Assembly (NCBI GenBank): GCA_002269645.1
Contig: NIVC01000352.1
Location: 372,001-436,000, forward strand
Length of the DNA stretch: 64,000 bases
Reading direction: 5' to 3'
From: Macrostomum lignano
Lineage: Eukaryota
Made by a program: the position numbers and the translations under genes. Positions 8,751 to 63,644 of this stretch are shown here, one piece after another; positions within the stretch are counted from its first letter, which is position 1; the number at the start of each line of letters is the position of its first letter. Below the pieces are notes generated by a model that ran no database searches, was not told the origin of the DNA, and worked only from the letters and a program-made list of their open reading frames with translations.

Positions 8751-14845
<6,095 letters not shown>

Positions 14846-27203: not shown

Positions 27204-27256
27204 ACTTATCCCATGGACAACTAGAGTAGACTACTCTAGTTGTCCATGACTTATCC
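27204..27256. mobile_element. 37-bp palindromic transposon remnant with an 8-bp TSD
   Basis: acttatcc + CATGGACAACTAGAGTAG-A-CTACTCTAGTTGTCCATG + acttatcc; perfect 18-bp arms. Confidence 0.9.
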
Positions 27257-29199: not shown

Positions 29200-30140
29200 G
29201 GCAGGCACTCATTTTGGCGCCGCAGGCACTCATTTTGGCGCCGCAGGCACTCATTTTTGCGCCACAGAAACTCATTTTGGCGCCGCAGGCACTCATTTTA
29301 GCGCCGCAGACACTCATTTTAGCGCCACAGGCACTCATTTTAGCGCCGCAGGCACTAATTTTAGCGCCGCAGGCACTCATTTTTGCGCCACAGAAACTCA
29401 TTTTAGAGCCGCAGGCACTCATTTTTGCGCCACAGAAACTCATTTTAGAGCCGCAGGCACTCATTTTGGCGCCGCAGGCACTCATTTTTGCGCCACAGAA
29501 ACTCATTTTGGCGCCGCAGGCACTCATTTTAGCGCCGCAGACACTCATTTTAGCGCCACAGGCACTCATTTTAGCGCCGCAGGCACTAATTTTAGCGCCG
29601 CAGGCACTCATTTTGGCGCCACAGAAACTCATTTTGGCGCCACAGAAACTCATTTTGGCGTCACAGAAACTCATTTTAGCGCCACAGGCACTCATTTTAG
29701 CGCCGCAGGCACTCATTTTAGCGCCGCAGACACTCATTTTAGCGCCGCAGACACTCATTTTAGCGCCACAGGCACTCATTTTAGCGCCGCAGGCACTCAT
29801 TTTAGTGCCGCAGACACTCATTTTAGCGCCGCAGAAACTCATTTTAGCGCCGCAGGCACTCATTTTGGCGCCGCAGGCACTCATTTTAGAGCCGCAGGCA
29901 CTCATTTTAGAGCCGCAGGCACTCATTTTAGCGCCGCAGGCACTCATTTTAGCGCCGCAGGCACTCATTTTAGCGCCGCAGGCACTCATTTTAGCGCCGC
30001 AGACACTCATTTTAGCGCCGCAGGCACTAATTTTAGCGCCGCAGGCACTCATTTTAGCACCGCAGGCACTCATTTTAGCGCCGCAGGCACTAATTTTAGC
30101 GCCGCAGGCACTCATTTTAAAGCCGCAGGCACTCATCTTG
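29200..30140. repeat. 21-bp minisatellite, ~45 units
   Basis: Unit gcaggcactcattttagcgcc. It is stop-free in several frames, which gives the spurious 315-399-aa ORFs. Confidence 0.97.
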
Positions 30141-31451
30141 GCGACTGCATGTACAGGCAGGAATTCACTTTGTTGCCGCAGGTGCTATATTTTGGCGCCC
30201 AGAAACAAAATTATTGATTTCCACAACGGGTTACAAGGTGGGGTGGGGCCGGACAAAGCATTGGCATGTCGAAAATTATTGCCCCAAATTATACATGTTG
30301 GGGTTACATTCTTTAATTTTAAATCTACATAAATAACCTATGTCAACCGAGGTAAATGTACATATTTACATGTACAGTTGCAAATGCTAAATAATCTATC
30401 GCAGATAAAGTCAAATTAGGCAACGTATTTAGTCATACCGGTATTGTACCATGTATAGTCTAGACGAAATTTATTTAAGCAATTTTTATTGAAAGTTACA
30501 CCGCTCAATTAAATTTTTCTTAGCTCGATAGCATATATAATCAATAAATTAGCAATTAGAATAGCAAAATAATGAAAGCAGGGGCAAAATCAAATTTGCG
30601 AAAATCAACAGAAGAAAAAGAAATTTTACTGACAATCCGAAAGCAACAAGTCAGTTTGCAATCCAATAGTCGATCTGTGTCTAATTAAAAATATGGTATT
30701 TGATAAATATATATTCCATTCCATGTAGTGATTTACCAACTAGGATAACAAAGAATAAAAGTCGTACGGCCAGACTGCGATGGGATGTAAATTGTGGCCA
30801 CAGAAAATCATTAAGACTAAAAGTACGAAGCACATTTTATGAAAGGTTTTTAACAAAGAACTGATCAATCACGGTCAGCAACCAGATCAGTCAGAATGAA
30901 TAACATAATTTATACCACCTTAATTAAAACTATAAAGATGCCATGCGGAAAGTTTTATAGCAAACAAGAATGGCAGAACGTATCGCCTTAAAACTACGCG
31001 TATATTGTAACAAATGATATATGCTCGTATTATTGATTGGCGAGAATGGCGCAAACTGCATTCTATATATATTTATGTTTGCGCATTGGATGCATATTCA
31101 GGGCGTTTGAGCTCTCAAAACTGCCGTTAGCGCGCGTGTGACCAGACACTGGCCGACGGGCCAACTAACAAATCATTGATGGTCACAATAATAATAATAG
31201 TAATAAAGATAGAAATAATAAAGAAATAAGAAAATAAAGATTGAACGCGCGATTACGGACCAATGGCCAGCCAAAATGAGCCAATGTCTAAGCTGTCCAG
31301 TGCTTGCAGGGCCGAGACTGAACAGCGCTGATCGGGTGGAATGGGCGATGCGAGAGCTGGGGCAAGCAAAAATAATTGTCATATCCTCAACTATCACAAT
31401 GAAACTCGGGAAAGGGGGTCTGGACGGCGGGCGGAGGCGGTTCAGCGCTTA

Positions 31452-34400
31452 TCAAAAGAACTTTGAATTGTCGAAGGCCTCATTGTCGATGCCGCCGCTG
31501 CGGCTGGAGCCTTGAACTGCTTCGACGATGCCACTGACTTCGCCGCCAGTGCTAGGCGATGGGCCTTCTATCGATTGCGAGTCGTCACCGTCAGGACCAG
31601 CCATGGGCAGCTCTAAAAACTCCCGCTCGGCAACGGGGATCTCAGACGGAGGGCTGTTCACTGTCACATCGTCGACTTTTGATGTCGGACGGGTCGACGA
31701 TTCAGCTTCGGCGTTGACCGGCGCTGACGCCACGGTGTTACTATCAATGTTGATATCCTCGACGTTGACAGACGGCTGGCCGAGGTACCTGCGAAGTGTC
31801 CCGTTTCACGTGCATTTTTAATAATAATGCTTGGCAAATGGCTGGCGAAGCATCGCTAAGCTGCTAATTTCTGAGTCAATGGGTGCGAGTTGAACAAGGT
31901 CTGTCGTGTGTTGTCAAGTGTGCTCTCCTAGTATAGAGAACGAATGGGGTTTTGCCATAGACAAATTAGGTGGAGAAAAAATCAAATTCCTCTAGAGAAT
32001 TACTAAACTCACTAGCGATGCGACAACTTTTTCGTTGCCCCAGCTCATTTCTAAGAAAATCGAATATACTGTCAGTTCCCATGAGGATATCCTGGATTTA
32101 TGGTAAAAATTCAACTTTCTATTTGTTGATTGCTCTAAGAAAAACATGTTAGACATGTTACACTACTTCATCTATGGGCTCTGCTTCTCCGCCAGTCATT
32201 TTTGTCTATGGTCAAAAGTCATTTCGGGACCAGTTAGAGCCATTTAAGTTTCATTTCATTGAAGTTCAGGCTATAGACATACCAATCCCCCACTTGCCTA
32301 GGGTGTGAGTCCATTGTGTCACACCTGCTGAATTTGGCCATGGACTACATGTTTGACTAGTCGTAGCAAATGATGGCGCTCGGTTGACGGGGAAATGACG
32401 GCCATAATAAAATCTTCACGCAGTCAAAATGCTTGTAATTTGTATCATGTTGATTTCTCATGGACTTTGCCCTTGAAAACAGTATTCGCTGCACTTGTCT
32501 CTCGCATATTATTAGAATAAATCAATATTCGCAAGAGGGCTGTGCGCAGCGTGACGCAACTCCTTAGGGGACATCGTCCCGCAGCCAGCATCTGCCCGTT
32601 CCGCTGACTCCTGAGCACATGCAAGCGCGCCAATACTGTACTCAGGCACGCACTCACACACCGCTCACACAGGGTGTACAGCAGCCCTGACTTTCTAGTC
32701 ATCAGGCATGTACACTCTCTGTGCCTTGGGGCTGGCCCTTGGGGCTGGCACGACAAAACCAAGGGTCATGGCGCGAGGCCAATATAACAGAACTTCACCT
32801 GTTCATGTCCAGATTGGCGAAGTCGGTCATGCAGGTCAGCACGTAGCTGGGGAAATTCTCCCCTGGCGGAGCTTCAACGCTGAACTCGTCCGGCCCGGTG
32901 GCCGTGTCGCCGTCGCGCACAGCGAAGGAGCCGGTGACGCGGACCTGCAGCAGGAAGCGGCGGGAGGACCGCTCCACGGGGAACTGGCACTCGCGGTTGC
33001 GCTTGATGGCAACGGCGTCCAGCTCGCACGGCACGTGCAGCCGACGGGCGCCGGCGGACGAGAGTGGCGCCATTTCAACGTCCGCGGCTCTGGAGGCGGC
33101 AATCGTTGCCGAGACCGAGCTGATGGCGGATGCGGTGGCGGCAGCTGGGACCATGATGGGGTGCCGGTAGCCGTACCGGCTGGGCCGGCATCTGCCAAGA
33201 GAGAGCGAGTGCAGCGAGTGTTCAGCGAGTTGCACTTTTTCACAAGCCGGTCTTTCTGTTGGCATTCTATGGAGTAGCTTGTTTTACCAGATGTTTGAAA
33301 TGTCTGCAACAATAACTACTTATCACCATGTCAGAAACATTAAAATCTAGGAAGCTTACAAACCTGAGAAAAATCAAACAAATTTAAAATCGAGACGAAA
33401 GTCTATCGAACCCGACCCGACACAAACCTAAAAAACCCAAAGACACAAACCTACAAAACCCAAAGACACAAACCTACAAAACCCAGACACAAACCTACAA
33501 AACCCGACAAGACACAAACCTACAAAACCCAGACACAAACCTACAGAACCCGACAAGACACAAACCTACAAAACCCAGACACAAACCTACAGAACCCGTG
33601 AAGAGACAAGACACAAAGACACAAACAAGCAGAAAATCAAAATAGACAAACATAAAGATACACGGACATGAACAGCTGCCGTTTACACATTAAGAATATT
33701 TCGCAGACGCACCTGCCAGTCGTTCTCGAGCGTTTCCGACGAATCCGTTTAACCTGCGACTTGCCGCTGGCCTCGTCCCGGTGCAAGTAGAGCAGCGCCG
33801 GGGCCCTGAACATCTCGCGCATGTCCCAGTCAACTGTGCGCCCGACAACCCGGGCTCGAACTTTGCGCCTGCAGGGGCAGCAGCTGAGCACTCCGGATCC
33901 GTGATAGTCTGGCGTGAACACCAGCGACTGCAGGTCCACCTCGGCGATGTCGCCTCGGCAGTGCAGGAATGCGTAAAGAAGCAGCCGGCAGATGTACCTG
34001 CGGGCGGAGTTCGACTCAATATATTGCGGTCTAAAAGACCTCTTGTTGGGTTTTGTAGGCTGTTTCCCATTTGAACTTTTAGATTTGTCTCTTTTTGGGT
34101 TTTGTAGGTTTGTGTCTTTTTGGGTTTTGTAGGTTTGTGTCTTTGGCTTTTGTAGGTTTGTGTCTTTTTGGGTTTTGTAGGTTTGTGTCTTTTTGGGTTT
34201 TGTAGGTTTGTGTCTTTTTGGGTTTTGTAGGTTTGTGTCTTTGGGTTTTGTAGGTTTGTCTCTTTGTGGGTTTTGTAGGTTTGTGTCTTTGGGTTTTGTA
34301 GGTTTGTCTCTTTGTGGGTTTTGTAGGTTTGTGTTTTTGGGTTTTGTAGGTTTGTGTCTTTTGGGTTTTGTAGGTTTGTGTCTTTGGCTTTTGTAGGTTT

Positions 34401-37117
34401 GTGTCTTTTTGGGTTTTGTAGGTTTGTGTCTTTTTGGGTTTTGTAGGTTTGTGTCTTTGGCTTTTGTAGGTTTGTCTTTGGCTTTTGTAGGTTTGTGTCT
34501 TTTTGGGTTTTGTAGGTTTGTGTCTTTATGGGTTTTGTAGGTTTGTGTCTTTTTGGGTTTTGTAGGTTTGTGTCTTTTTGGGTTTTGTAGGTTTGTGTCT
34601 TTGGCTTTTGTAGGTTTGTCTTTGGGTTTTGTAGGTTTGCGTTTTTGGGTTTTGTAGGTTTGTGTCTTTGGCTTTTGTAGGTTTGTGTTTTTGGGTTTTG
34701 TAGGTTTGTGTCTTTGGGTTTTGTAGGTTTGTGTCTTGTCGGGCTTGGAAGGTTTGTGTCTGTGGGTATTGTAAGTTTGTGTCTTCAGGTTTTGTCGTTT
34801 ATGTATTTTCGGTTTTGTAAGCTTCTATTTTCAAGTTTATCTTTTCAGCTTTTGTAGTCTCGTGTCTTGTCGGGTTTTGTAGGATGTGCTGTGTCAGCGA
34901 TTTCTGTAGGTTTGCGTCTTCTCGGGTTTTGTAGGTTTGTGCCTTTATCGGCGCGCTACTGCTGAGCAACTCTGGCAAACAAAGTCTTTACTCAAGTACT
35001 TCACTGTGTTTGCTATCCTTGGCTGAAGTTCATGGCGCTCAACTAAAAAACCTAGTCCACAGCACTTGAGGTAAATGTAGTGCATGCCCTTGTCCCTCAC
35101 CTAGCGACCCGCCTGACGTCCTCGGGCGCGCGCAGGGCGCCCAGCTGCCACTCGTAGACCAGGCAGAACTGTCGCAGCAGCCGCAGGGCGGTGCCCCGAG
35201 TCCGCTCGGCCGCTTCAGAGTCGACAAGAAGGCGGCCGATTCGCGAGTTCGGCCGGGCGCCCCGGCTGCGCCGCTTAGCCAAACTCGACCAGGCCTCCTC
35301 GCTGCTGCTCAGAAATTCGCGCAAGTTCTGATCATACCTGAGCAACTGGACGGGTTTGGCGCGGTGTAAGCCATTAGCCATGCATAAGCATATTTTTCTG
35401 CATGTGACAGTACATCTGGGCACATCGTTAGGAAATCGGCCTTCAAACTCTTCTTAAAATTGTGTTGCAAATTTTAGTTTAAATTGCAACTTTTACGAGT
35501 ATAAGCTCGTAAACATTTTACGACGCACTCGCCACTCACTTCCGGAAATTGCGTTTCTTGGTTTCGATTTGGATTTCAATCAAAACCATTAAAATGAGCT
35601 TAATGTACTGTTTCACTACAGAACCTGTTCAGCTATTCAGCAGCAACTGATTCATGGGCGCTGTGCAGAGTGAGGCACTGAGAGAGACTAAGTGAGGCAA
35701 TCGGAGAGTGACTGAGTGAGGCACTGAGAGAGACTAAGTGAGGCAATCGGAGAGTGACTGAGTGAGGCACTGAGAGAGACTAAGTGAGGCAATCGGAGAG
35801 TGACTGAGTGAGGCACCATGAGTGACTGAGGCAATGGGAGAGTGACTTGTGAGGCAATGGGAGAGTGACTTAGTGAGGCAATGGGAGAGTGACTGAGTGG
35901 GGCGCTGGGAGAGTGTCTGAGTGAGGCACTGATAGAGACTGAGGCACTGAGAGAGTTACTGAGTGAGGCACTGAGAGACTGTGAGGCACTGAGAGTGACT
36001 GAGTGAGGCACTGATAGACTGAGTGAGGCACTAAGAGAGTGACTGAGTGAGGCGCTGATAGACTGAGTGAGGCACTAAGAGAGTGACTGAGTGAGGCGCT
36101 GATAGACTGAGTGAGGCACTAAGAGAGTGACTGAGTGAGGCACTGAGAGACTGTGAGGCACTGATAGAGACTGTGAGGCACTGAGAGTTACTGCAGGTAG
36201 TAAATAAATTAGATGCGTAAGTAAGCCGACACAGCAAGATATGATAATGAAAATTTAGAAACAAACGATAACATATAAGAATATTGCACTCATAGGCGCG
36301 TATATTGAATTAACTTTAATTAGAGTGCCGTAGCGATTTTTAAAGCTGGATAAATAAGTGAAAAAGCAACAAAAACAGAAACACACACAAAAACGGCAAA
36401 AGTAGGTTAAACAGGTTTATGAACGACAAACTATTTATTACATAAGTAGATCGCGTAGCGTAATAATACATTAATCTATATAATTGTGAAGATCTGTTAA
36501 GCTAGATAGACAGCCACTTAGAATCAGAAAACTCACCTGATCCTGATCCGTCAGGTGTTGTACAATGTCGATGCCGCTAATATTATTAATGTAATTATAA
36601 TTATAATATTAATATTATTAGCTAGTAGAGCTGCGCAGCTGAGAATGCCTATTGACCAGCATCAGACAGATCTGATTGAATAATTTCCCAGCGCAAGAAT
36701 ACTAGAGAGGGAAGAGATAGAATTGCCTTGGGACGCAGAAACTTTATAGAACACAGTTCGGCCTATCGGACAGACCAGAAGAAGAGAAGTAAATTATAGA
36801 GAGAGAGGGAGAGACTGACTATTCTGCGGTGCGCACCGGTCTGAGGCTAAATAAAATAGGATCCCTCCTCCCTCCTACCCGGCGTTCGACGGCTTACTCC
36901 TGGCTTGTGGAGGCAAGAGAGGGGCAGGCAGGCAGGCAGGCGATAAGGTTGAGCTGAGCATTGGGCCTCAACACACAGCAGTGCAGGCACTGCAGCAGCC
37001 ACCCCAGTACGTGCATGGCCTATTGAATAGGCGGCGGCCAGGAGAGGGGGAGAGGGAGGGAGAGGGAGAGGGGGACGGCGGGGGGCGGGCCTGACACGGC
37101 CGCCGGCGTTGAAGCAT
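31452..37117 (-). CDS. Multi-exon protein of unknown function (~441-472 aa)
   Basis: Phase-consistent exons 36576-36537, 35345-35101, 33997-33713, 33191-32799, 31788-31452. The 5' end is either 37117-37098 plus a 6-nt microexon at 36903-36898, or one exon 37016-36898. No family recognised. Confidence 0.7.
33410..33630 (+). repeat. ~23-25-bp minisatellite (acacaaacctacaaaacccaaag)n
   Basis: Read directly; lies in the intron on one side of exon 33713-33997. Confidence 0.9.
34045..34945 (-). repeat. Same minisatellite in the opposite orientation, (ttttgggttttgtaggtttgtgtc)n
   Basis: Reverse complement of the 33410-33630 unit; lies in the intron on the other side of the same exon. Confidence 0.9.
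35660..36190. repeat. Compound GA-rich minisatellite (gagtgaggcactgagagagact-type units)
   Basis: Recurrent gtgaggca and gagtgact units. Confidence 0.9.
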
Positions 37118-37510: not shown

Positions 37511-49101
<11,591 letters not shown>

Positions 49102-50315
49102 TTTTGTGATAAAACCTGTTGCTGTAATTTTATGCAAAATAATATGTGTAGGCCTAGTCGTAGTCTAGTGAAAGACGATGTACTCTGTGAGTCTTCAGAA
49201 TTGAACATTAACTAGGCCTAATAATGCACTTTTTTAGAAACATTAAATTTTTTGAATTAGGCCGTACTTTAGAATGCTTAGAATTGTAAATTATATCAAA
49301 TGTTTTAATTAGATTACTTTTCGTAAACCAGGAAAAGTTACAATTAAAAGTTAAAACACTCATATTGTTCAAAAACTAGAATATTTTATGGATAATTTGT
49401 TATATTTAGTGTCTTCTTCTCGTTTTAATCCATCCAAACACACGCGTGAACTTCTTTAACAAGTCATAAAAAGGTAAAATTTTAAATGAATTTTATTCCC
49501 TCAGAATTTTTTCTCCATTTTCTTTGTGGTTTTCAGCGTCTGTTTATTTTAAACTGTATATGATACAGTTGGGCATCCATCTCGGGAGTCGGGACTCGGG
49601 ACACAGGTGGTAAAGGTATTTATTTGTACATGTATATGTAGCGCGCTCGGGTATATTCAACAGAAGTAAAAAATTCTCCATCCCAAGCGAGAGGGCCGTT
49701 GCACGACTTTGATTTATACATAATATCAAGGCTACTTAAAGTAGTGTTCCAAGACAGCTTTTAAATTAGGACGTTTGTGAATGCCATATTGCATAACTTG
49801 CACCATATGCAGACTGCAGTATACAATTTATGTGATATAGAATCAGCCAACATGCATGTACGTACGTCCATGTACGACAATAGCCATAGTCCCAGTGCAT
49901 GCAAGCCCAGGTAACCCCTGCCGTGGTCACTACTACAGTGTATAATCCTGCATGATTTTCTCTGCCATCTTAAAACTTTTCGTTAATGTTCTGTTTTTAG
50001 TAACAAATGTTAAAACATGTTACGTACGCGTAGCTCAGTACGTAGAATTACCAATAGAAAAACAGCTTTGCTCAAATGGAGATCGACTGTACACTAGCTT
50101 ATAATCTTCCCTCTCAAACATAAACAATTACAATCGTCCGATCATATGCGCGAAAAATGTTACAGCCTGTACTATAATGCACTGCAATACGCTCGTCAAT
50201 TATGACTGTTGGTTCACATTGCCGCGCTAGTACAGGTACAACTGTAGCTTCGTCAAAATTGCTCAAATCAGTGGTCTGTAGTAGCGGTGTTAAATAAATT
50301 AGGCGTCAAGCGGTG

Positions 50316-50990
50316 TGTGACGAATAAAGGCGGGAAGACGTACGGTTTGTGTAGCGGTTAAATTCGATCATCTAGAGCCAGCGGCCGACTTCCCTTAGCG
50401 TTATTTGCAGATTTGGTATGTTGAATTGAATGTTAGATTTGGATTGGTAGCTGCTTAATTTTAGTGCGACTAAAGCAATTGAATGCGACGGCTAAGGGGG
50501 CCGCGAGAAGCGGAGCGAAAACCCAGGAGTGAAGGGCGAGAGCGGCGGCTGACTGCAAGCGTATATTTAATTGGTAGGTAAACAGATAACAAACAACAAC
50601 ACCCCTAATCCAAAACCCAGACAAACCCCCCACGCGGCGCGCAATGTACATGTACAAATTAATCGATAAATTATATCGTGTAAGAATAACATACGCCAGT
50701 ACATGTACTACCCAAGGACGACTTAAGTCGTCCTTGGTACTACCATGTAGGTAGAACTACTTTACAAGAAATAATAACGATATGAATGAAATACAAATAA
50801 TAGAATAAATACATACGAGGCTACAAAAACAAAGCAATTAACTGTAACATTAGTGCAATAATAATGCGTATAGAATATTGTTAAAATTTTAAGAATTTAA
50901 GAATTCTTAAAATTTAAGAATACAAGTAGTACGGTATGCATGCGAGATAAGGAAATACGATCAGATGATTCTACGAATTACACTGTCACA
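50316..50990 (-). repeat. Gypsy LTR, ~675 bp
   Basis: Starts TGTGAC at 50990 right after the PPT and ends GTCACA at 50316 (6-bp terminal inverted repeat). No second LTR in the window to confirm it. Confidence 0.65.
50705..50744. mobile_element. 24-bp palindromic transposon remnant with an 8-bp TSD
   Basis: gtactacc + CAAGGACGACTT-AAGTCGTCCTTG + gtactacc. Confidence 0.9.
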
Positions 50991-53184
50991 CCCGCCCCTC
51001 CTCCGATAAGAGCCGGTGACAATAAGTAATATTAAACGAAACAAAATGATAATTGTTGGAGCACAAAAGAACCGAAAATAGACGAATGAACTTATAACGA
51101 TCGACGAGAACAAGCGAACAATCGAATAACAGATATTGCAACAGTGAATATTTGAATGAATTCGGGATTAAAAATCAATATCAAAAGTCAATATTTTAGA
51201 TATTTGTGGGAACTTCTGAACATACAGTATTACAGCAACAGCGGATACGGAAAAAACCAATACGAAATAGTTATGATGCAGAAAATATTTGCTGCTGAAT
51301 TACACGCATGATATAGACACAGTCTATAGACACAGTTCAATACATTGATTTCTAACTACATGTAATTTGCTAAACGGTAACTCGGCACAATAACCTAATA
51401 GTAGTGGCCTGTCTGCCAACACCACACAGAATGACAGGCACACACTAAGAGGACAGCAACACGAGATGAAAATGGTAGCCCCTAGTTACCTAAGAACCCC
51501 AAAACACACGCGAGAAGAGGAAACGGAAACGGAAAAAGAATTCGGGCAAGCCCGGAGGCGAGCCCAGGTTCACGCCGACGCGAACCCAGCCGAGGACCGG
51601 TCAATTCTGACCGCGAGGGCACGCCCACTGAGCGCCGGAACCGACCTCGGAACAACGAAACTAACGAGTGAACTTATATAACAGCTTATCGAACGGCATA
51701 TACCGCGCTAAAGACCTACAAGCGCTGCTTAACTCAGACGAAACGCGATTAAATGACGATGCAAATTAACTAAACTCTAGGACTGCGTTTATCCGAAACT
51801 ACATGTATGAATTCTGTACTTTGTTATCCTGGAACAACCCGGTTTATTTTATTTTTTGTGACAATTACATTAGTTTTTTATACATTTTTAAAAGAATATT
51901 TTTTGAATGTTAATTTTAACCGGTCAGAGCGAGTTGTGATCTGTTTTTATTTATTAAATAATTGTGCTAGAAAATTTCGAAAACGTGCCGTTTTGGTAAC
52001 AATCCTTCCGGATCTAGTCGTCTGTGTCGATTGAGGCAAGGAAATGGCGTCAATCTGTTCTTGTGGAGCGACAGCTTCCATCGTGGTCTCACTGTCAGGG
52101 TCCTCGATGGCTTCTACCGGCATACTGGCTTCCCCCCTAACGGGACTGCCTTCAGCCGGAGCTTGCACCTCGGTGACATCTTCTGCCGCCTCCTCTAACA
52201 GATCGCCATTTTCATCGAACACAGCTCTACCACTCTGCTCACCGTTCGAAACCTCGTGCAGGTCTCATCGATTACTCCCGCCTCTCCTTCCAAGGGCTCT
52301 ATCGGCGTTGGTGGCACTGCAACTGACAGGTCGGGAGCGGCAACTGTGGTAACCTGCTGGGACTCATCCACAAGCGCTAATGACGCACTTTCTGAGACCT
52401 GGAGCGGTTGAGTCGCAGCACTTTGATTGGAGCCGGTGATGGAGCGCGAAGACTCCCAGGTAGATTGATCGTCTCCTCGCAAGCCTACTCTTGACGACGG
52501 CATTCTGGCTGGCATGCGAGCCCCGTACCTGTCCACAACATCTTCATAAGTCTGTTTGCGCACACAGCGCTTCATCCGATCGACATTGTACACATTGTGA
52601 GACGGGTTGGGAATGCGCTCCAAAAAATTTATTCGAGCGAATTCTGGAATGAGTCTGTAACTCCTCTCCGAAATATTTTGCACCACCTTGTACGAAAGAA
52701 CTGATCCTTGATCCGATCTAGTGCGCCGGTTCGATCGAAATAAATACTCAGCAACAGCAGCAGCTATATATAACCTTATTGATCTATATCTCCTAACACG
52801 ACTAATATCCCTCCTAGATATGGACAGTTAAGTGCCTGTACGAGTATGTAACACGGTAAATGTACAAGTCATAGAAAACTCCAGCAGTACATACATGTAA
52901 ATACATGTACACTACAGCAATGCTCAAAAGGTATCAACCATAGAGCCTATATATATATATATATATAGAGCCAGAAAGATGACTCCTTTAACACTAAACC
53001 TTACTATAAAAGTGATGAAACTTTTATCTGCACAGCCACAGAGATGGGAGATGCGAATAAAACTGGGAGAGTATACGAGAGGATAAATCAAAGTCCCAAA
53101 TTCAATCCAAGTAGCTATAAACGTCGTTTAAAAGTTGGAATGGATCGGTAACTATAACTTTGCTTCCTGGGCGTCAATAACTGA

Positions 53185-55279: not shown

Positions 55280-56103
55280 TTCGTACCTGCTGCCGAGCTG
55301 TAATACTTCTCTGTCTGGGAAATTGGGGACTTTTTGTATTTTGATCTAATAATTAAAAAACAGCTTTGTCGGTCTTATATTCTCAGAGAGTGAATGCTCC
55401 TCATGGGTTCGCTAGTGGACACAGGATTCGGCCAATGGTGGTGGATTCGCTTTCTGATCGCCAACAAGGGGATAGAAGGCAGAGTAGCTGAGCTAAACTG
55501 AAACGTTCTGGAATGGCTTTTTGAGATACGCGTCCTTTGCGCCCCTCTGTTCTCCTTAATCCACTCTAATCTGCAGCTTTCCACCCTGCATGGAAACGGA
55601 AGGCCACTCCCGATGCCATTTGCAAAGTCTGAATCATTTCACCCCCTCTTACATCTGCTCTCCTCATCCTGCCAAAGATGCATGTCAATATCATCAGTTA
55701 CTGTAAGAGCTAAAGGCTCATCTCTTGTTTAGGCAAGTAGCATTGCACTGCAGAAATGAGATGCATTGATTTACTGAAAGGGCTGCTTGTCCCTGGTACA
55801 GAAAAGGACAGGACAGGAAACCCAATGAATATGTATGTGCTCTATTCATAGAGTTCTGCAGATAGCTGCTATCTACTGTATACTGTGTCTAAAACAGATT
55901 TAAACAAATTCAACCCCAAAACGATTCTGTGCATCCAGCTGTCTTAAGGAAGGTCGATTCGTCGTCATCTCCATAAAGTTGCGCCGAGTGATGCAGCAGC
56001 AAATCAACAAAAAAGTGATACATTTTCTGTTAAATATGTTTCCATTACTTTAGTCCCTGATTAATCGGTGGCTCTTCAGTCTTCTACGAGCGTAGGCTCT
56101 ATT

Positions 56104-56295
56104 CAGGGAATACTCAATGCCAGGGAACAGAAAACAACAGAATTTGGGGCCTACTTTTTGTGTATTCCCTTGAAGTGAGTTTTTTTCAGTCGTGAAACCT
56201 ACGAGTATCCAAGTAATGCTTCTCGAGGACTAAGTTTTTAATATATCAGTCTCCAACTTTGTCCTTCCCCGTCCCTAGAACTTGAATAGTCCCTG
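56104..56295. mobile_element. 192-bp MITE with CAGGGA ends and a perfect 8-bp TSD
   Basis: gctctatt on both sides (56096-56103 and 56296-56303). Ends CAGGGAATACTCAA vs (rc) CAGGGACTATTCAA, 12/14 match. Confidence 0.75.
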
Positions 56296-56699
56296 GCTCT
56301 ATTGCTACGGTGGTAAACTGCCGTCACGCGATTTATTGGACAAATCAAAGCGATGCTGAAATGCCTTTGAGTACCTTCCCATTGTCTATTGTTGTCAGAC
56401 TTAATTACATGCCCAGACCATTTTGTGAGAATCGTTTTATACAAAAATTGTAGATAAATGGTTTGCGGGGCAGACAGAGGCAGTGTAAGTCACGCAAATG
56501 CATTAAACTTGGAGTTGCGGCTTTGTTGTAGCGCGTGATGTATGTTTTGAGCATTGTAGAAATATAAAAATGCACCAACTTAGTTGATACTCAAGCTACA
56601 AGCTACGAAGCGACAACTTTGACAACGTTATTCATGCATACATGTACAAGACAGCAGCACAACAAGATGTTCTGTCAGTTCTTATAAAAAATAACATCA

Positions 56700-57175: not shown

Positions 57176-58486
57176 AGAAAAATAGCCGAATTTTGTATAG
57201 TTTTCAATCAGTTACCGCGAGTTTTGAATATTTATAAGGAAAGTTGATGCTGTGCTTGTATCGTATCACTTTTTGCTAGCTAATGCATCAGTAAACGGTA
57301 TTTTTTGGCCTGCTTTTCTATGAATCACGTGATGTGCTAACTGGTTAACAAGAGTTTAGTTGCGAGCAAATCTAACAACTAACAATCTGTCGGTTTTTGG
57401 ATACCAAAAATGAGTTGATTATTGAGCTTTTCTACGGCTGAATACGGACGGACAAGTTGCGACATTTAAGCTGGACTTCGACAATGATGCTTAATCTCGA
57501 TGATGCCACCGTCGAAGGCACCACGAGAATCGAAAAATTACGACAAATACGGAAAAATCAGTTGATTTTAAAGTCGACTTTCTCATCCAGGATTGATAGT
57601 CGACTTCCAACTTGGTTGCCTCTCCTCCTTGAGAGAAAATGAAGACTTATAGGGCGCTGCGGCCTGTTCTCAATTCGGTGGGCTCCTCCAAGTACGTTAC
57701 TGCACGCTTCCCTCTCGTCTAGGCCTTTGCGTGGATCGTAAACAAAAGCAGACAGACTGGCTGATGCAGCATTGCAAACGCTATGATTCTGGTTAACCGC
57801 TTTAAAAATCAATCAGCTGGTCTCTAAAGCAAATTCATCGACGAGGTATTGACGCGCGATGCCTGTTGGCCTATCGAAATTTCAGGTAGGAGATATCCAG
57901 AAGACCATGCACTACGAGCGTACTCGTACATGATGTGAGAGCATTTATCGGCAATGTTCTTCCATTTGCTATCCATTCGAGTTACGCTCGAAGGAGTTAC
58001 AAAAATTTCCACATGTAGTAAAGCAACTGCAGTGCTAAATATAAACCCTTTCCATTTCCAATCAGCGGTTTCGCATCTCTATCGATCAATCACATGATTC
58101 GCTCCGCCCCGGCCAAGAAACTTGAGCCTTAAGTCTTGAGCCGTTTTCAGGCCAAAGAAACGAAATTAGAGGATAAAAATCTTATACTCCAGCAAGCTAT
58201 TGAACTGAGGCCAAAACAATTCGACTATACATAACATTTAGGCATCCAAAAAGGTTAGGAAACAGCTCTACTTCAAGTAGTCACCTCCATAAACTAAATG
58301 AATCTTATCGGCTAGAAATTTTATTTTAACCTTTATTGGATTAAAAGTACGATAGATCACAGTCAAAATTGCTTCTTTATGTGATAATTTGGCAGATTAA
58401 AGCAAGAGAATTTTCATTAAAGTTGAAAATCAAGCAGAAAATTTTAAATCTTAAATCCGAAATGTTGGATTTTTCTCGGCGCAAAA

Positions 58487-59893
58487 TCATTCGACCTTGG
58501 CCGACTTCTTCTTTGACATGCTCAACTGTTCCTTTTGCTGCTTCCGATCTCGGCTTCGCATGTAGAGCCAAAGACCGGAGGACAGCAGGTGCAGGCCCTG
58601 AGCAAGGCCAGTCAGCCAGCTTGGCGGCTGCCGGCTGTGCAGGGCGACGCACAGAGTAGTCACAACGATGCAGCGCATCAGCTCGATGGTGGCGGCCGAG
58701 CGGGGGAAGCCGTCAATCAGGCGGCCGATGGAGTACAGGGTGAGGAGGATCAGCGCACAGCTGACAGCCACGGCCGGCACAGACAGGCTCTGCCGGTTGC
58801 TAGCCAGGTAGATGTAGACAACGTGGATAGCGAAGAAGTGCAGGGTGGCGTAGGCAGTCACCCAGATGGGCACCTGGGGATTGTGATACTGCACCGGGTT
58901 TTCGATTTCCGGGAAATCGTCAGTGCCGAGCCGAGGCGTTCCTGGCTGCCAGCCGGGTCCGTAGAAGAAGGCGCGGAATCTGTCCGTCCAGTTGCTGTGC
59001 TGGCGCCACAGGCCGAGCACGTATTTCAGATGGAACAACTGCAGCTCTATGGGGTCGAAGGTGTTCACTGGATGGATGAGGCCGTACACAGGCGGCTCGT
59101 CGTCCTTCTCAGCCTGAAAAGTGCCAAAAATCCGGTCAAACAGAATGAAAGTGCCGCCATAGTTCTTGTCAATACAGTAGGCATTGCGTCCGTGGTGGAC
59201 TCGGTGATGCGACGGCGTGTTCATCACGTACTCGATGGGCGCAGGCAGCTTCTTGATCACTTCGGTATGGATCCAGAACTGGTACAGCAGGTTGAACTGG
59301 ATGTGTACGGCAAACAGAGATGGCGGCAGCACCAGAGCCAGTGGTAGGTAGATAAACCAGCTAAAGTAACGCTGTAGCACGGATTGGCGCAGCGCAGTGG
59401 TGAGGTTGTACCGCTCCGAGCTGTGATGCATCTGGTGGCCAGACCAGAACAAGTTCACCTCGTGCGCGGTTCTGTGCACCCAGTAGTAGCAGAAGTCCAC
59501 CCCGATCAGGGCGGCCAGCCAAGCCCAGGCCGAGTCCCAGGGTACGTCAGCAATGCGCCAGTGATCGTACACCCAGATGTAGCTGGACACCTCAATGCTG
59601 CGCGCCAACAGCAGTGGCAGCTGGGAGATCAAGCCGCCGCTGACTGAGCCAATGCTGTCGTTAAGAGGAATGGCCTTTCTGCGGCCCTTGCACACCAGGA
59701 TTATATATTCGATAAAGATGAGCAGCAGAAAGTACGGGATGGCTTCGTCAACAAATTTGGGTACTTTGTCCACCTCCGGAGCGCTGGACTCCCACGGCGT
59801 CACCAGGTAGAGCATTCTGCGTAGGCCAGTCAGCGGGTCCACCAGGTGCGGCCTCGTCACCTCCTCTGTGACGTTGCTCATGTTGCTAGCCAT
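58487..59893 (-). CDS. AGMO: Alkylglycerol monooxygenase (TMEM195), intronless, 468 aa
   Basis: Eight-His fatty-acid-hydroxylase motifs YYWVHRTAHE, WSGHQMHHSSE and NTPSHHRVHHGRN; also TTALRQS, IDKNYGG and FDRIFGTF; C-terminal TM helices. Confidence 0.95.
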   Translation of the reverse strand: MASNMSNVTEEVTRPHLVDPLTGLRRMLYLVTPWESSAPEVDKVPKFVDEAIPYFLLLIFIEYIILVCKGRRKAIPLNDSIGSVSGGLISQLPLLLARSIEVSSYIWVYDHWRIADVPWDSAWAWLAALIGVDFCYYWVHRTAHEVNLFWSGHQMHHSSERYNLTTALRQSVLQRYFSWFIYLPLALVLPPSLFAVHIQFNLLYQFWIHTEVIKKLPAPIEYVMNTPSHHRVHHGRNAYCIDKNYGGTFILFDRIFGTFQAEKDDEPPVYGLIHPVNTFDPIELQLFHLKYVLGLWRQHSNWTDRFRAFFYGPGWQPGTPRLGTDDFPEIENPVQYHNPQVPIWVTAYATLHFFAIHVVYIYLASNRQSLSVPAVAVSCALILLTLYSIGRLIDGFPRSAATIELMRCIVVTTLCVALHSRQPPSWLTGLAQGLHLLSSGLWLYMRSRDRKQQKEQLSMSKKKSAKVE

Positions 59894-60365
59894 GCTCAGC
59901 TAGTGGAGGAGTGACATTCAGCGATTCCGAGTAATACAGCAAAGAGATCTGCTTGAGCCTGAGGGCGAAGCAAAATATAGCCAGTCGGATCGCAGTCTGT
60001 GCGTACAATATGCCGCACACTCTGCCAGCGCTCAGTGACAGCTCATCACTAGGTGAATCTCTTAACTCTAATCTTGGGGCAACTTGGCATAGAGACGAGG
60101 CGTACAATGAGAAGGCCTGTACACTCGCCTGACCACACCTATATAATGAACTTTGGCTAGGCATGTGACCACTGACACTTGCAATGCCCTCCATTCGACC
60201 GCAAAGTACGTTTTGGCTTCTACGAGTATGTAACAGGCGGTGGCACGTCGAGCCACGGTTTAGCGATAACGGGTTCTTATTTGCCCTGTTTTTCTTTTAT
60301 ACATAAATCTCAGCAAAACTAAAGCAATACTTGCAGTTTTCCAGCATTCTTAGTTTAATGTTCTG

Positions 60366-62411
60366 CAAGGACTACTTAAACTAGGGATGGGAAACTGGCC
60401 AAATCATGCAGAAAATAGTTGGAGGCTGGTTTTTTCTAGCGCTCCCTAGAATTTTAGTGAACGTAGAAAGCTGGTTTTTCGCCATCCTGAACAGAATTTA
60501 TTCCTCTATAAGATGCACAACTTATTTTTTGTCGAGCTTCATTTTGAGAGTAGCAGTGAGCTTTTTTGTACGGTACTCCTTTTTTTCACAGTGTTTTTAT
60601 AGAGAATGCCTTATAAAAATCTGCAGTCAGACGGATTTTTGTCTATGGTATAAAACGCATCATCACTATACATGTAACACTTGTGTATCAATTGAGCATG
60701 CAACGAAGGCTTTGCTTTAGTCTGTCTGATGACTGATAGAGCCTGATACATGTATATGAATGAAGAGCTTAGCTAAAGTCGAAAAACTCTAGCAAGCCAA
60801 CTTTTTTCGAGCCAAGCTCACGAGGCCCCCGTCGGGTAGAAAATTAACACAGAGCTACCCGGATGTAGCGAGGCTGCGGTAGCTGCTAGAGCGCAATGAG
60901 AACTTGTTCGCCAAGCACGAGTTCGACCTGGGCACAACGGATCAGCTGCAGCACCAGGTACAACGGGAAAACGGGTACAACGGGAACGCGGCCGCACCGG
61001 CAAATCCAAGCAGCGCCGTCTGCCTCTGTCTGTGCGAGACCAGGTGGATAAAAAGATTTTACAGATGCTGGACAGCGGCATCATCGAGCCGTCGTCGTCG
61101 CCATGGGCGAACAACCTGCTGGTGGTCCGCAAGAACGGCAAAATGCACGGACGCTGAATGCCTGCACGGACGCGTACCCGCTGCCTCACATGCAGCAAGC
61201 ATGAATGCTCTGGTCGGGTGCTTCTGGTTCTCCACCATCGACTGTCGGCAGGGCTACCACCAGGTGGAGGTGGCGGAAGAGGACCGGTTTAAAACTGCTT
61301 TCTATTCGACCCGCGGCCTGACGCAGTTCCACAAGACGGGCTTTGGAATTTGCAATGCCCCAGCGACGTTCCAGCGGCTGATGGAACTGGTGATGTCCAG
61401 TCTGTCCAGGGACTCCGTGCTGACTTACATCGACGACATCATCGTCTTCAGCAGGACCTTTGACGAGCATCTGGTGAGACTTGAGCGCGTTTTTTAACGG
61501 CTGCGAGATGCGGGTCTCAAACTGCACAATGCGAAGAGCGTGTTCGGCCATCGCCGGGTGCTGTACCTGGGACATTTGATCAGCGAGCAGGGTATTGCAC
61601 CGGACCCCAGCAAGTTTGAGGTCATTCGCAGCATCCCTAGTCCAAAGTCGGTCGAAGAGGTGAACATTCTGACCATTGCCGAATACTTCTTTCCTGGTCA
61701 CGACTTTCCAGCACTTTCCAGTACGACTGTCGAATTGCTTTTTTGAAGACCTTGTCTAGCGCTACAAGACCAAAGACCAAAGTCGGCTGTCCACTGTTGA
61801 ATGTGCCATGAGTCGAGACTGACTGACACACGACACCATGTAGAGGTTTATAATACATATTTGTGAAATTTTGAGTGCTTATATGTCCACAAAATATATC
61901 TAGCAATACGTACGTACAGTCACCGACTGCGACTGTGTGAAAAAATCGTCTTCTGCTTTCCCTTTGCTCTTTTCCATTGCCCCCCCCTCCGAATTCACGT
62001 GGCTCGGTTTCAGAGTAATTGCAGAGCAATTCTTTTAGATTAATGACAAGGAAAATTATATTCTTTATTCAGTTAGTCAAGGCTAATTTTTAGATGACGC
62101 AGCAGAAGCGGCTACAAGCTTAACAGCGATGATGCTTGTGCAGAAACCCTAGACATTTCAATAAGGCGTTTGCTGTGTTAAATTCCCTAGAAAAAGGGGG
62201 TCCTGTACAAAAAAAGCTCACTGCTCCTCTCAAAATAAAGATCGACAAAAAATAAGTTGTGCATCTTGTAGAGGAATAAATTTTGTACAGGATGGCGAAA
62301 AACCAGCTTTCTACGTTCACTAAAATTCTAGGGAGCGCTAGAAAAAACCAGCCTCCAACTATTTTCTGCAAGATTTGGCCAGTTTCCCATCCCTAGTTAA
62401 AGTAGTCCCTG
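60366..62411. mobile_element. 2046-bp non-autonomous DNA transposon with ~206-bp TIRs and a perfect 8-bp TSD (P-like or hAT-like)
   Basis: atgttctg on both sides. Ends CAAGGACTACT / (rc) CAGGGACTACT. TIRs 60366-60571 and 62205-62411, which explains the near-identical ORFs at 60406(+) and 62120(-). Confidence 0.92.
60850..61665 (+). pseudogene. Ty3/Gypsy reverse-transcriptase fragment inside the TIR element
   Basis: FAKHEFDLGTT, IIEPSSSPWA, FSTIDCRQGYHQV, KTAF, FGICNAPATFQRLM, LTYIDDIIVFS, YLGHLIS. Frameshifts and an in-frame stop; no LTR, gag or integrase. Confidence 0.9.
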
Positions 62412-63644
62412 ATGTTCTGTTGATCTTATCGCTGACCTATTCTATTCTAAAACAAGGCTTGCTCAATGATGAAAGTAACATTTTGTGTGATGTTTTGGTT
62501 TTGGTTCTAAACTTCAAGAGCTCAAATGATAAAATCTAGATCTATCTAGATATTTTTTAAACTTGATAATCGAGAGTGCATCCCGTGCTTTACAAAAATG
62601 CGCGTAGTACAATGAAACTGCTCAGGAATAGACCAGATTTTGCAGCTCACTTGGCGACATCAAACGTTCTCAACTGCAGTTCTTGTCTATTGCGCCGCGG
62701 CCATCGCCCAGCAGGCCAGATGAAACGCTACTACTGTACAATCGACGCAGCCAATGACCAACTGGGTTTGGCACCAGGAAGACGCCAAAGAAGACCATGG
62801 AAAAGTACAGCCCGGGACAGATCTCGTACGAGCTCGTAGTGGCCCAGACCGAAGGCAATGTTCAGTAGACCGGCTATCAGAGCGTGCCGAACGCCCTGCA
62901 GTTGCGCTTGCTGTAAATGTCGAATGAGATGTATTGTAAACTGTCGAATATCTTGTTACTTGATTCTCCTGAATATGAAGCAGGTTGCAACAAGTGAGCC
63001 ATGCCATTAGCTGAGCTGCTGTAATTCACAAGTCCAGCAAGTCCGAACTTCCAGCTGACGCTGACGCCCAAACTAGCTCGTATTTTTTACTTTACTACGA
63101 GCGCGTATATTTGCTTTCGTTTTGTTTGCGCCGAGTAAACAGTTTGTAAAGTAAGCTCCCAGTACTACTAAGCACTAATGACGCTACTTAACGTCCATAT
63201 TCGCGAGAAAAGGAGTCATTTTGAATGCCAAATTCTCCAACTTCTAGTACCAAGTACTACGGTAAATAGCATGAGGATCGGAGGCATGTCAACCTACTCG
63301 TAGTTCTAGAATGGCTTAGTTTCTCTGTCAAACCCGACTATTGGATCGGCGATGAGAGTAGAATCTTGAAATAACAGAAGACCATACTGGAGACCCATCG
63401 AAGCTGGAGACCCATGGATCTCTAGACCTATCGAATAAAGTACGCTGTTCTGTTTCGAACTAAATTGACACCCCATTCTGATCTATTCTGGGTAAACTAA
63501 CGCGCAATCGACCTTTAAGGCCTCCAACGATTCCAGATCAATTCGAGCCCAAAATAAATAAACATCTACAATAAGCCACACATGTATAAATCACATCTGT
63601 CTCTAGCATCACAGGTTGAAATCAATCAATCAGCTTAAACTGAC

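What the first reader, a model, noticed from the sequence alone, without database searches (positions are those of the whole stretch)
60366..62411. One transposon clan seen at four size stages (2046, 192, 37 and 24 bp), each with a perfect 8-bp TSD
Seen: four insertions with related CA(A/T/G)GGA(C)NA(C/T)T ends at 27212, 50713, 56104 and 60366. The largest has ~206-bp TIRs with few mismatches and an intact TSD, so it is probably young. Inference: a recently mobile P-like system with long Galileo-like TIRs whose full-length members, MITEs and excision scars coexist in 64 kb. No autonomous partner is in this window, and hAT remains the alternative assignment.
Basis: partly seen in the sequence, partly recalled or inferred. 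Interest (0 to 1): 0.8.

Follow-up and report, generated by a model that had tools for sequence, protein, structure and literature searches.

The report
P-like transposon relics in a flatworm

Summary
The window is Macrostomum lignano contig NIVC01000352.1. Four elements (2046, 192, 37 and 24 bp) each sit between perfect 8-bp direct repeats and share CA-N-GGA termini. Shuffled sequence gives about 0.03 such structures per window.

Paralogous copies of the region prove two of them are real insertions. The 2046-bp element and the 37-bp palindrome each have an empty site with a single target copy in one paralog and are present in another.

- The 2046-bp element is not full-length. It is a non-autonomous shell: 202-bp inverted repeats around a broken Ty3/Gypsy-type reverse-transcriptase fragment.
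- It is not very young, because it predates the split of two paralogs that are 1-2 % apart.
- The 24- and 37-bp palindromes have the anatomy of experimentally sequenced Drosophila P-element excision junctions: target copy, 12-18 nt of each repeat joined at a palindromic microhomology or with one inserted base, target copy.
- hAT-type cleavage should leave no transposon sequence at the donor site.

A P-like (THAP9-type) enzyme is therefore the best reading, but it is unproven. No transposase of P, hAT or Merlin type lies in about 150 kb of examined DNA, and the genome could not be searched. This is a new member of a known kind, of modest interest.

The parts
60358..60365 (.). left copy of the 8-bp target-site duplication ATGTTCTG of E2046
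   Evidence: single copy (CAAAACAT on the other strand) at the empty paralogous site L003 9524-9531
60366..60567 (+). left terminal inverted repeat of E2046 (202 nt, extends with gaps to about 60585). It starts CAAGGACTACTTAAACTAGGGATGGG and contains two AGCTGGTTTTT-type subterminal direct repeats 45 bp apart (60418-60434, 60463-60479)
   Evidence: (I1, I2, D3)
60586..62190 (+). interior of E2046: non-coding stretches around a captured, frameshifted fragment of a retrotransposon pol gene; no transposase
   Evidence: the same interior is in the paralogous copy L002 7435-9528, which keeps about 300 bp more of the RT
60883..61692 (+). reverse-transcriptase (RVT_1) fragment spread over several frames (motifs LDSGIIEPSSSPW, YIDDIIVFS), without protease, RNase H, integrase or LTRs
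   Evidence: E 2.5e-16; E 1.8e-17
62210..62411 (-). right terminal inverted repeat of E2046, read CAGGGACTACTTTAACTAGGGATGGG from the end
62412..62419 (.). right copy of TSD ATGTTCTG of E2046
56104..56295 (.). E192, a 192-bp MITE of the same clan. Its ends are CAGGGAATACTCAATGCCAGGGAAC / CAGGGACTATTCAAGTTCTAGGGACGG; TSD GCTCTATT at 56096-56103 and 56296-56303
   Evidence: present at the same site in L002 and L003, which are one haplotype here
27212..27248 (.). E37, a perfect palindrome CATGGACAACTAGAGTAG-A-CTACTCTAGTTGTCCATG between TSD copies ACTTATCC (27204-27211, 27249-27256); read as an excision scar
   Evidence: empty site in L005; variant of equal length in L007
50713..50736 (.). E24, a perfect palindrome CAAGGACGAC-TTAA-GTCGTCCTTG between TSD copies GTACTACC (50705-50712, 50737-50744). 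Read as an excision scar joined at the TTAA that occupies positions 11-14 of the E2046-type TIR
   Evidence: lies inside a 3.4-kb segment missing from the paralogs, so no paralog comparison is possible

Best explanation
The four features are relics of one clan of non-autonomous cut-and-paste (class II, TIR) transposons of Macrostomum lignano that duplicate 8 bp of target.

- E2046 is an internally deleted shell. It keeps about 200-bp inverted ends with repeated subterminal motifs (probable transposase-binding sites). Its interior was replaced by filler DNA that includes a piece of a Ty3/Gypsy-type pol gene, most likely copied in during gap repair.
- E192 is a miniature derivative (MITE).
- E37 and E24 are not transposons. 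They are donor-site scars. An element inserted and made the 8-bp duplication. It was later cut out by a transposase that cleaves the 5' strand well inside the inverted repeat, so that 3' tails of at least 14 to 18-19 nt of the repeat stayed on both flanks. The two identical tails were then joined by end joining.
- In E24 the tails were joined at the palindromic TTAA at TIR positions 11-14. In E37 they were joined tip to tip with one extra base.

This long-staggered cleavage is the hallmark of P-element/THAP9-type transposases, so the mobilising enzyme is most likely of the P superfamily.

Shown: the structures, the clan relationship, the 8-bp duplications, the empty sites, and the absence of a transposase locally. 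Inferred: that the palindromes are excision products, the cleavage geometry, the superfamily, and capture of the RT fragment by repair.
For: - Anatomy and statistics.
- Empty sites with a single target copy in paralog NIVC01001232.1 for E2046 and E37. The same insertions are present in paralog NIVC01001361.1.
- P transposase cuts the 5' strand 17 nt inside the TIR (PMC7776569), leaving 17-nt non-complementary 3' tails on the donor ends (PMC2895639).
- Sequenced P{wa} repair junctions have the form TSD + up to 17 nt of TIR + microhomology or insert + up to 17 nt of TIR + TSD. The commonest short-microhomology junction, CATGATGAAATAAC(AT)GTTATTTCATCATG, is a perfect palindrome joined at a palindromic microhomology, like E24's CAAGGACGAC(TTAA)GTCGTCCTTG. 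Junctions with a single inserted base resemble E37. Insertions templated from the flanks resemble the L007 variant.
- The ancestral E2046-type TIR has TTAA at positions 11-14. E24's arms match it at 13/14.
- hAT, Transib and MULE transposases form hairpins on the flanking DNA, so the whole transposon end leaves with the element (PMC5499845).
- Known P-superfamily elements also make 8-bp TSDs and start with CA: D. melanogaster P starts CATGATG and zebrafish Pdre2 starts CATACC.
- P-derived MITEs with unrelated central filler are known in Anopheles (PMC1562414).
Against: - No P-type (or any 8-bp-TSD type) transposase was found in the window or in about 85 kb of paralogous DNA. The genome itself could not be searched.
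- E37 keeps 18-19 nt per side, more than the 17 nt of the Drosophila enzyme. A different stagger must be assumed.
- No paralog shows a full-length element at the E37 site. Both copies that carry it carry 37 bp. Excision is therefore inferred, not seen.
- Aborted repair synthesis after excision can in principle leave very short two-ended derivatives for any superfamily.
- There are only two scars and four target sites. The targets show no shared motif.
- The cleavage chemistry of several 8-bp-TSD superfamilies is unknown.
Confidence: 0.58

Rival explanations
1. The clan belongs to the hAT superfamily. The micro-palindromes are extreme internal-deletion derivatives made when repair synthesis from the sister chromatid aborted after a dozen or so nucleotides on both sides and the nascent ends were joined.
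For: - 8-bp TSDs.
- CAG/CAA-type ends resemble hAT ends such as Mar's CAG(G/A)GGTAGGC.
- hAT (Buster) elements occur in planarians.
- Other 8-bp-TSD MITEs with CAGTG ends lie in the same M. lignano region.
- SDSA followed by end joining is a common outcome after excision.
Against: - hAT cleavage leaves no transposon sequence on the donor, so both scars would need synthesis tracts of only 12-18 nt on both sides, symmetric in both cases.
- None of the four TSDs fits the Ac-type nTnnnnAn pattern (pattern from my own knowledge), and only one of four fits the Buster-type nnnTAnnn pattern.
- A 202-bp TIR is long for hAT (my own knowledge).
- T and C at terminal position 3 (E37, L002) do not fit the usual hAT end (from memory).
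Confidence: 0.15
2. The clan belongs to another 8-bp-TSD superfamily whose cleavage chemistry is uncharacterised (Merlin, Zisupton, Novosib, a Mutator relative or an undescribed group). That enzyme also leaves long TIR tails at the donor site.
For: - Merlin has 8-9-bp TSDs and TIRs of 24-462 bp, and is present in Platyhelminthes.
- No transposase was seen, so nothing ties the clan to P directly.
- DNA transposons of M. lignano (3 % of the assembly) appear undescribed at superfamily level in the papers searched.
Against: - Merlin ends carry a conserved terminal 5'-GG. All eight ends here start CA.
- No DDE_Tnp_IS1595 or MULE domain was found in the window ORFs.
- P is the only characterised superfamily known to produce this scar anatomy.
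Confidence: 0.15
3. The 24- and 37-bp palindromes were inserted as they are: minimal paired-end substrates ('nano-MITEs') integrated by the transposase, each making its own 8-bp TSD. They are not scars of a larger element.
For: - The E37 site is empty in one paralog and carries a 37-bp element in both others. No long element is seen there in any copy.
- Both palindromes are perfect and have intact TSDs.
Against: - They lack all subterminal sequence. P-type and most other transposases need internal binding sites beyond the terminal repeat (figure legend in PMC7776569).
- A 24-bp duplex cannot bend to pair its own ends.
- No second copy of either palindrome occurs in roughly 150 kb of M. lignano DNA examined.
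- Their form is exactly what end joining of excision tails produces.
Confidence: 0.05

Closest known systems
Drosophila melanogaster P element and its excision (donor-site repair) junctions
   Same: - 8-bp TSD.
- Ends start with CA (CATG in E37).
- Scars consist of both TSD copies enclosing 12-18 nt of each inverted repeat, joined at a palindromic microhomology or with 1 nt inserted. This is the form tabulated for P{wa} and explained by the 17-nt staggered cut.
   Different: - The TIR is 202 bp here against 31 bp.
- One scar keeps 18-19 nt per side, more than 17.
- No THAP/GTP-binding transposase has been seen.
- The host is a flatworm.
- There is no similarity of TIR sequence beyond CA(T)G.
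P-MITEs of Anopheles gambiae (AgaP-MITEs, Quesneville et al. 2006)
   Same: Non-autonomous derivatives with P-type ends, perfect 8-bp TSDs and a central part unrelated to the master element. The authors proposed that these arise by gap repair from an ectopic template. E2046 (with RT filler) and E192 fit that picture.
   Different: In Anopheles the masters are known and the TIRs are 27-31 bp. Here the master is unknown and the TIRs are much longer.
Galileo (long-TIR member of the P superfamily, Drosophila)
   Same: Long, structurally dynamic TIRs that take up foreign TE fragments, and many non-autonomous two-TIR copies. One target here (GTACTACC) begins with Galileo's GTANTAC consensus.
   Different: - Galileo TSDs are typically 7 bp, rarely 8. 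All four here are 8 bp.
- Galileo TIRs reach about 1 kb (my own knowledge, not checked here).
- The other three targets do not fit its consensus.
- The resemblance is in TIR length only.
hAT MITEs (e.g. Mar/Buster, Drosophila willistoni)
   Same: 8-bp TSD, CAG-type ends, small non-coding derivatives.
   Different: - hAT TIRs are 11-12 bp in those MITEs.
- Target consensus nnnTAnnn or nTnnnnAn is not seen here.
- hAT excision proceeds through flank hairpins and should not leave TIR sequence.
Merlin superfamily
   Same: 8-9-bp TSD, TIRs up to 462 bp, present in flatworms.
   Different: Merlin has a conserved terminal 5'-GG, against CA here. No IS1595-type DDE domain was found locally.

Membership tests
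P superfamily (P / THAP9 / Galileo / 1360) | Autonomous members encode a transposase with an N-terminal THAP domain, an RNase H-like catalytic domain and a GTP-binding insertion | tested here: inconclusive
   None was found. Pfam was run on window ORFs of 80 aa or more, after dropping low-complexity ORFs and the AGMO-gene ORFs. tblastn with D. melanogaster P transposase (checked against PDB 6P5A) was run on the window plus four paralogous loci. The genome could not be searched, so absence locally says nothing about the clan's master.
P superfamily (P / THAP9 / Galileo / 1360) | Target-site duplication of 8 bp (7 bp in Galileo/1360) | tested here: met
   Four of four perfect 8-bp TSDs. Two were verified against empty paralogous sites.
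P superfamily (P / THAP9 / Galileo / 1360) | 5'-strand cleavage far inside the TIR (17 nt in D. melanogaster), so donor-site scars retain up to that many nt of each TIR between intact TSDs | tested here: met
   This is an anatomical match only, with no biochemistry. E24 is 10 + TTAA + 10 and E37 is 18 + 1 + 18, each between intact TSDs. They compare with the junction tables of PMC2895639 and the cleavage description in PMC7776569. E37 exceeds 17 nt by 1-2 nt.
P superfamily (P / THAP9 / Galileo / 1360) | Terminal inverted repeats starting 5'-CA | tested here: met
   All eight ends start CA-N-GG. P starts CATGATG and Pdre2 starts CATACC. This is a weak criterion, shared with hAT.
hAT superfamily | 8-bp TSD with consensus nTnnnnAn (Ac group) or nnnTAnnn (Buster group) | tested here: not met
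   The length is met. The TSDs ATGTTCTG, GCTCTATT, ACTTATCC and GTACTACC give 0/4 full matches to nTnnnnAn on either strand and 1/4 to nnnTAnnn. The Buster consensus is; the Ac consensus is from my own knowledge. With n = 4 the test is weak.
hAT superfamily | Excision through a hairpin on the flanking DNA, so scars carry altered flank bases and no transposon sequence | tested here: not met
   The two scars retain 12 and 18 nt of each TIR with unaltered TSDs. The mechanism is described in PMC5499845. This holds only if the palindromes are direct end-joining products.
hAT superfamily | Transposase with BED zinc finger and C-terminal hAT dimerisation domain | tested here: inconclusive
   No such domain was found in window ORFs. 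The genome was not searchable.
Merlin superfamily | 8-9-bp TSD and TIRs of 24-462 bp | tested here: met
   8-bp TSDs; E2046 TIR of 202 bp. Criteria are from PMC8101967.
Merlin superfamily | Conserved terminal 5'-GG | tested here: not met
   All ends start CA.
Galileo (genus-level family within P) | 7-bp TSD (consensus GTANTAC) with very long TIRs | tested here: not met
   All four TSDs are 8 bp. Only E24's begins with GTACTAC. The TIR is 202 bp.
MITE (structural class) | Short (under about 600 bp), non-coding, with TIRs and TSD, derived from a class II family | tested here: met
   E192 is 192 bp, has no ORF, has imperfect TIRs of about 28 nt and a TSD. High copy number could not be tested: there is no second copy in about 150 kb.

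The most novel reading that the evidence does not exclude
The 24- and 37-bp palindromes are themselves the transposed units. In this reading, a flatworm transposase can integrate a bare pair of 12-18-nt ends and duplicate 8 bp of target. They would be the smallest eukaryotic transposable units known.

The evidence does not exclude this. The E37 site is empty in one paralog and holds a 37-bp element in both others, and no long element is seen there.
Probability: 0.05. Interest if true: 0.8.

Novelty: new member of a known kind. Interest (0 to 1): 0.3.

Why it matters
DNA transposons make up about 3 % of the M. lignano assembly. No superfamily-level description of them turned up in the papers searched.

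This locus gives a clean, paralog-verified example of an 8-bp-TSD family. It also gives two naturally preserved donor-site scars.

If a genome-wide survey confirms the P-like reading, the arm lengths of such scars would report the cleavage stagger of a non-Drosophila P-type transposase directly from genome sequence. An intact master element would also be a candidate endogenous vector, or a source of instability, in a flatworm that is used for transgenesis.

The insertion 472 bp upstream of one of three alkylglycerol monooxygenase-like gene copies offers a natural test of a promoter-proximal insertion.

Otherwise this is routine repeat annotation.

Tried and rejected
1. Autonomous partner in the window. 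Pfam on stop-to-stop ORFs of 80 aa or more (low-complexity and AGMO-gene ORFs dropped) gave only Tc1/mariner-type domains, TPX2 and the RT fragment. tblastn with a PDB-verified P transposase on the window plus four paralogous loci gave nothing.
2. Reaching other copies through the protein database with the ORF that runs through the TIR gave no hit.
3. Sampling more M. lignano DNA through a multi-copy Tc1-like transposase failed. Its relatives are mostly short metagenome or Logan contigs, and only one distant M. lignano protein appeared.
4. An exact scan of metagenome contigs for the conserved 27-nt TIR core gave no match.
5. Further clan members.
   - CAAGGACCACTGTA at 10007(-) and 19124(+) share 16 nt including two bases outside the supposed end and face outward. 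I rejected them as termini.
   - CATGGACTAC at 32339 has no partner.
   - CAAGGACTACTAGGGAAT in L007 7615 lies inside another MITE and has no partner.
   - The CAGGGACTA motif ending at 56059 has no partner.
6. Other copies of E2046 or E192 sequence in about 150 kb: none besides the paralogous ones.
7. A shared target motif or palindromic target: only E24's site is palindromic.
8. Literature on M. lignano class II elements: nothing specific.
9. A paralog comparison for E24 is impossible, because E24 lies in a 3.4-kb segment absent from the other haplotype.
Full report
**Source.** The single-exon ORF at 58487-59893(-) encodes a fatty-acid-hydroxylase / alkylglycerol-monooxygenase-type protein. 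Its exact product lies on NCBI contig NIVC01000352.1 of assembly GCA_002269645.1. That assembly is Macrostomum lignano Mlig_3_7. The window corresponds to about 372001-436000 of that contig.

The sequenced DV1 line carries extra large chromosomes, and the assembly holds 180 Mb of duplicated blocks at least 95 % identical. This gave me paralogous copies of the region to compare:
- NIVC01001361.1: loci L002 and L007.
- NIVC01001232.1: loci L003, L004 and L005.

**Observation.**
- E2046 (60366-62411) has 202-nt inverted repeats that are 96 % complementary, and the TSD ATGTTCTG.
- E192 (56104-56295) has the TSD GCTCTATT.
- E37 (27212-27248) is a perfect 18+1+18 palindrome with the TSD ACTTATCC.
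- E24 (50713-50736) is a perfect 12+12 palindrome with the TSD GTACTACC.

A blind scan for 8-bp direct repeats bracketing inverted termini recovers all four. Markov shuffles give 0.03-0.3 such structures per window, depending on stringency. CANGGACNAC occurs 9 times against 1.1 expected.

The ends are related beyond the first heptamer.
- E2046 and E192 share CA-R-GGA-C/A-TAYTYNA, a short spacer, then CYAGGGA.
- E24's arm, CAAGGACGACTTAA, matches the left E2046 TIR at 13 of 14 positions.
- E37's arm, CATGGACAAC-TAGAGTAG, looks like the same two blocks without the spacer. This is the weakest link.

**Proof of insertion and relative age.**
- At the E2046 site, L003 has the uninterrupted sequence with one target copy (CAAAACAT).
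- L002 has the same element at the same site with the same TSD. In L002 one TIR is reduced to 45 nt and about 300 bp more of the interior is kept.
- At the E37 site, L005 has one ACTTATCC and no palindrome. L007 has a 37-bp element between the same TSD copies.
- Three-way site patterns show that around both sites the window and the 1361 contig are sisters and the 1232 contig is the outgroup. Unique differences upstream of the AGMO-like gene are 12-16 for the sisters against 45-61 for the outgroup.

Both events therefore happened after the first split and before two copies diverged by about 1-2 %. The 4 % mismatch between the E2046 TIRs agrees with this. E192 is at the same site in all copies. 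However, L002 and L003 are identical over that stretch, so this amounts to two independent haplotypes. E24 lies inside a 3.4-kb segment (49473-52863) that the other haplotype lacks, bounded by a 10-bp direct repeat, so it has no comparison. In short, the elements are polymorphic among paralogs but not recent.

**What E2046 is.** Its interior (60586-62190) has no transposase. It holds an 810-bp stretch (60883-61692) homologous to retrotransposon reverse transcriptase. The stretch is broken across frames and lacks neighbouring pol domains and LTRs. M. lignano is rich in Ty3/Mdg4 elements. The same fragment is in the L002 copy, so it was there at or soon after insertion.

This is the structure of a non-autonomous shell whose middle was replaced by ectopic filler, as proposed for Anopheles P-MITEs. 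Each TIR carries AGCTGGTTTTT-type repeats 45 bp apart. I take these as candidate transposase-binding sites (inference).

**What the micro-palindromes are.** Each consists of the two TSD copies enclosing only the outermost 12 or 18 nt of both inverted repeats, head to head. P transposase cuts the 3' end at the transposon boundary and the 5' strand 17 nt inside the repeat. Each donor end therefore keeps a 17-nt 3' tail of repeat sequence, and the two tails are identical rather than complementary.

The sequenced repair junctions of P{wa} have this exact form.
- The commonest short-microhomology junction, CATGATGAAATAAC(AT)GTTATTTCATCATG, is a perfect palindrome, because identical tails can only anneal at a self-complementary motif.
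- E24 is the same kind of product: CAAGGACGAC(TTAA)GTCGTCCTTG. TTAA sits at positions 11-14 of the ancestral E2046-type TIR.
- E37 (18 + A + 18) resembles the junctions with near-full tails and one inserted base.
- The L007 version of E37 has centre T instead of A. Its last 9 nt are replaced by TCCGTGCAG, a copy of the adjacent TSD end plus flank. This recalls the flank-templated insertions in the same tables. It is either an independent repair product of the same excised element or a secondary change; I cannot tell which.

By contrast, hAT, Transib and MULE transposases make hairpins on the flank, so the complete transposon end leaves the donor.

**Superfamily.** The scar anatomy, the 8-bp TSD and the CA-start ends point to a P/THAP9-type enzyme. 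I put this at a little under 0.6, for four reasons:
- No transposase was seen.
- E37 needs a stagger of 18-19 nt rather than 17.
- Aborted repair synthesis could in principle give short two-ended derivatives for any family.
- Several 8-bp-TSD superfamilies are biochemically uncharacterised.

hAT is disfavoured by the scars, by the TSD sequences (0/4 Ac-type, 1/4 Buster-type) and by TIR length. Merlin has 8-9-bp TSDs and TIRs up to 462 bp and is present in flatworms, but it fails on its conserved terminal GG. 'Galileo-like' is only a resemblance in TIR length, since Galileo usually duplicates 7 bp.

**Search for the master element.**
- Pfam on window ORFs of 80 aa or more (low-complexity and AGMO-gene ORFs dropped) found only Tc1/mariner-type domains, TPX2 and the RT fragment.
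- A P transposase sequence, checked residue by residue against PDB 6P5A, found nothing by tblastn in the window plus four loci.
- Attempts to reach other genomic copies through the protein index or metagenome contigs failed.
- No other copy of E2046 or E192 sequence lies in about 150 kb.

The tools hold no searchable copy of the M. lignano genome, so the decisive classification is left as a next step.

**Verdict.** This is a new member of a known kind. Interest is modest. Its most useful aspect is that naturally preserved scars could report the cleavage geometry of a non-Drosophila P-type transposase.

Noticed in passing
window 60368 and 62409; L002 7437 and 9526: Position 3 of the terminus (CA-N-GGAC) differs among the four ends of one orthologous insertion. 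It is A and G in the window and C and C in the paralog, while the next 40 nt are nearly identical. Across the clan it takes all four bases. This may be a hot spot or an unconstrained base. The sample is small (rough p of about 0.04).
   Followed up: partly
L007 2999-3051 (minus strand), paralog of window 27204-27256: The sister copy of E37 has the same length but centre T instead of A. Its last 9 nt are replaced by TCCGTGCAG, a copy of the end of the right TSD plus flank. It is either an independent repair outcome of the same excision or a secondary templated mutation.
   Followed up: partly
window about 57227-57371 (breakpoint); L002 and L003 12500-20100: The two paralogous contigs NIVC01001361.1 and NIVC01001232.1 are 2-3 % apart upstream of this point. 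Downstream they are identical at all 6169 aligned sites. They differ again at the E37 locus. This could be recombination or gene conversion between duplicated chromosomes, or an assembly mosaic.
   Followed up: partly
window 49473-52863: A 3.4-kb segment is absent from the other haplotype. It is bounded by the 10-bp direct repeat ACAAGTCATA and has no LTRs, TIRs or Pfam domains. It could be an insertion here or a microhomology deletion there. It contains E24.
   Followed up: partly
window 50693-50756: The target of E24 is an 18-bp near-palindrome (TACATG-TACTAC-CATGTA). Its TSD begins GTACTAC, matching Galileo's GTANTAC consensus. The other three targets show no symmetry.
   Followed up: yes
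window 3907-4992 (+): An uninterrupted 361-aa Tc1/IS630-like transposase ORF (HTH_23, DDE_3). Its closest relatives (up to 82 % identity) are on short Logan, ENA or JGI contigs rather than annotated M. lignano proteins.
   Followed up: partly
window 44231-44689 (-): Fragment of a mariner-type transposase (Pfam Transposase_1, with the motif HDNAPAH).
   Followed up: no
window 22996-24268; L004 15199-18907: A 1273-bp element with 8-bp TSD GAAAATTT, TIR GGCCATCTTGAACTTTAGGT and internal 162-bp tandem repeats. The paralog carries a further 3.7-kb non-coding insertion inside it.
   Followed up: partly
L004 4757-5287 (empty site at window about 12985); L007 7250-7779: Two MITEs of about 530 bp with CAGTG-type ends (CAGTGGTGTGATT, CAGTGCTGGGC) and perfect 8-bp TSDs (GCGACGGC, AACAAAAG). 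The first is absent from the window. This is a second, different 8-bp-TSD group in the same region, possibly hAT-like.
   Followed up: partly
window 21307-22459, related arm at 16380: A long foldback-like inverted repeat whose palindromic internal 8-mers mimic TSDs in automated scans.
   Followed up: no
window 10870-12329, 29201-30143, 34080-34785, 37715-39430, 42063-42602: Large micro- and minisatellite arrays: (TGTC)x365, 21 bp x45, 25 bp x30, 28 bp x62 and 24 bp x23. They create long spurious ORFs in several frames.
   Followed up: no
window 59893-60366: E2046 lies 472 bp upstream of the start codon of the AGMO-like gene copy. The paralog without the insertion (L003) offers a natural comparison for any effect on expression.
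   Followed up: no
window 9992-10007 and 19122-19137: A 16-nt motif, GTCAAGGACCACTGTA, is present once on each strand 9.1 kb apart, facing outward, and is conserved in the paralog. It resembles the clan terminus but extends 2 nt beyond it and has no TSD.
   Followed up: partly
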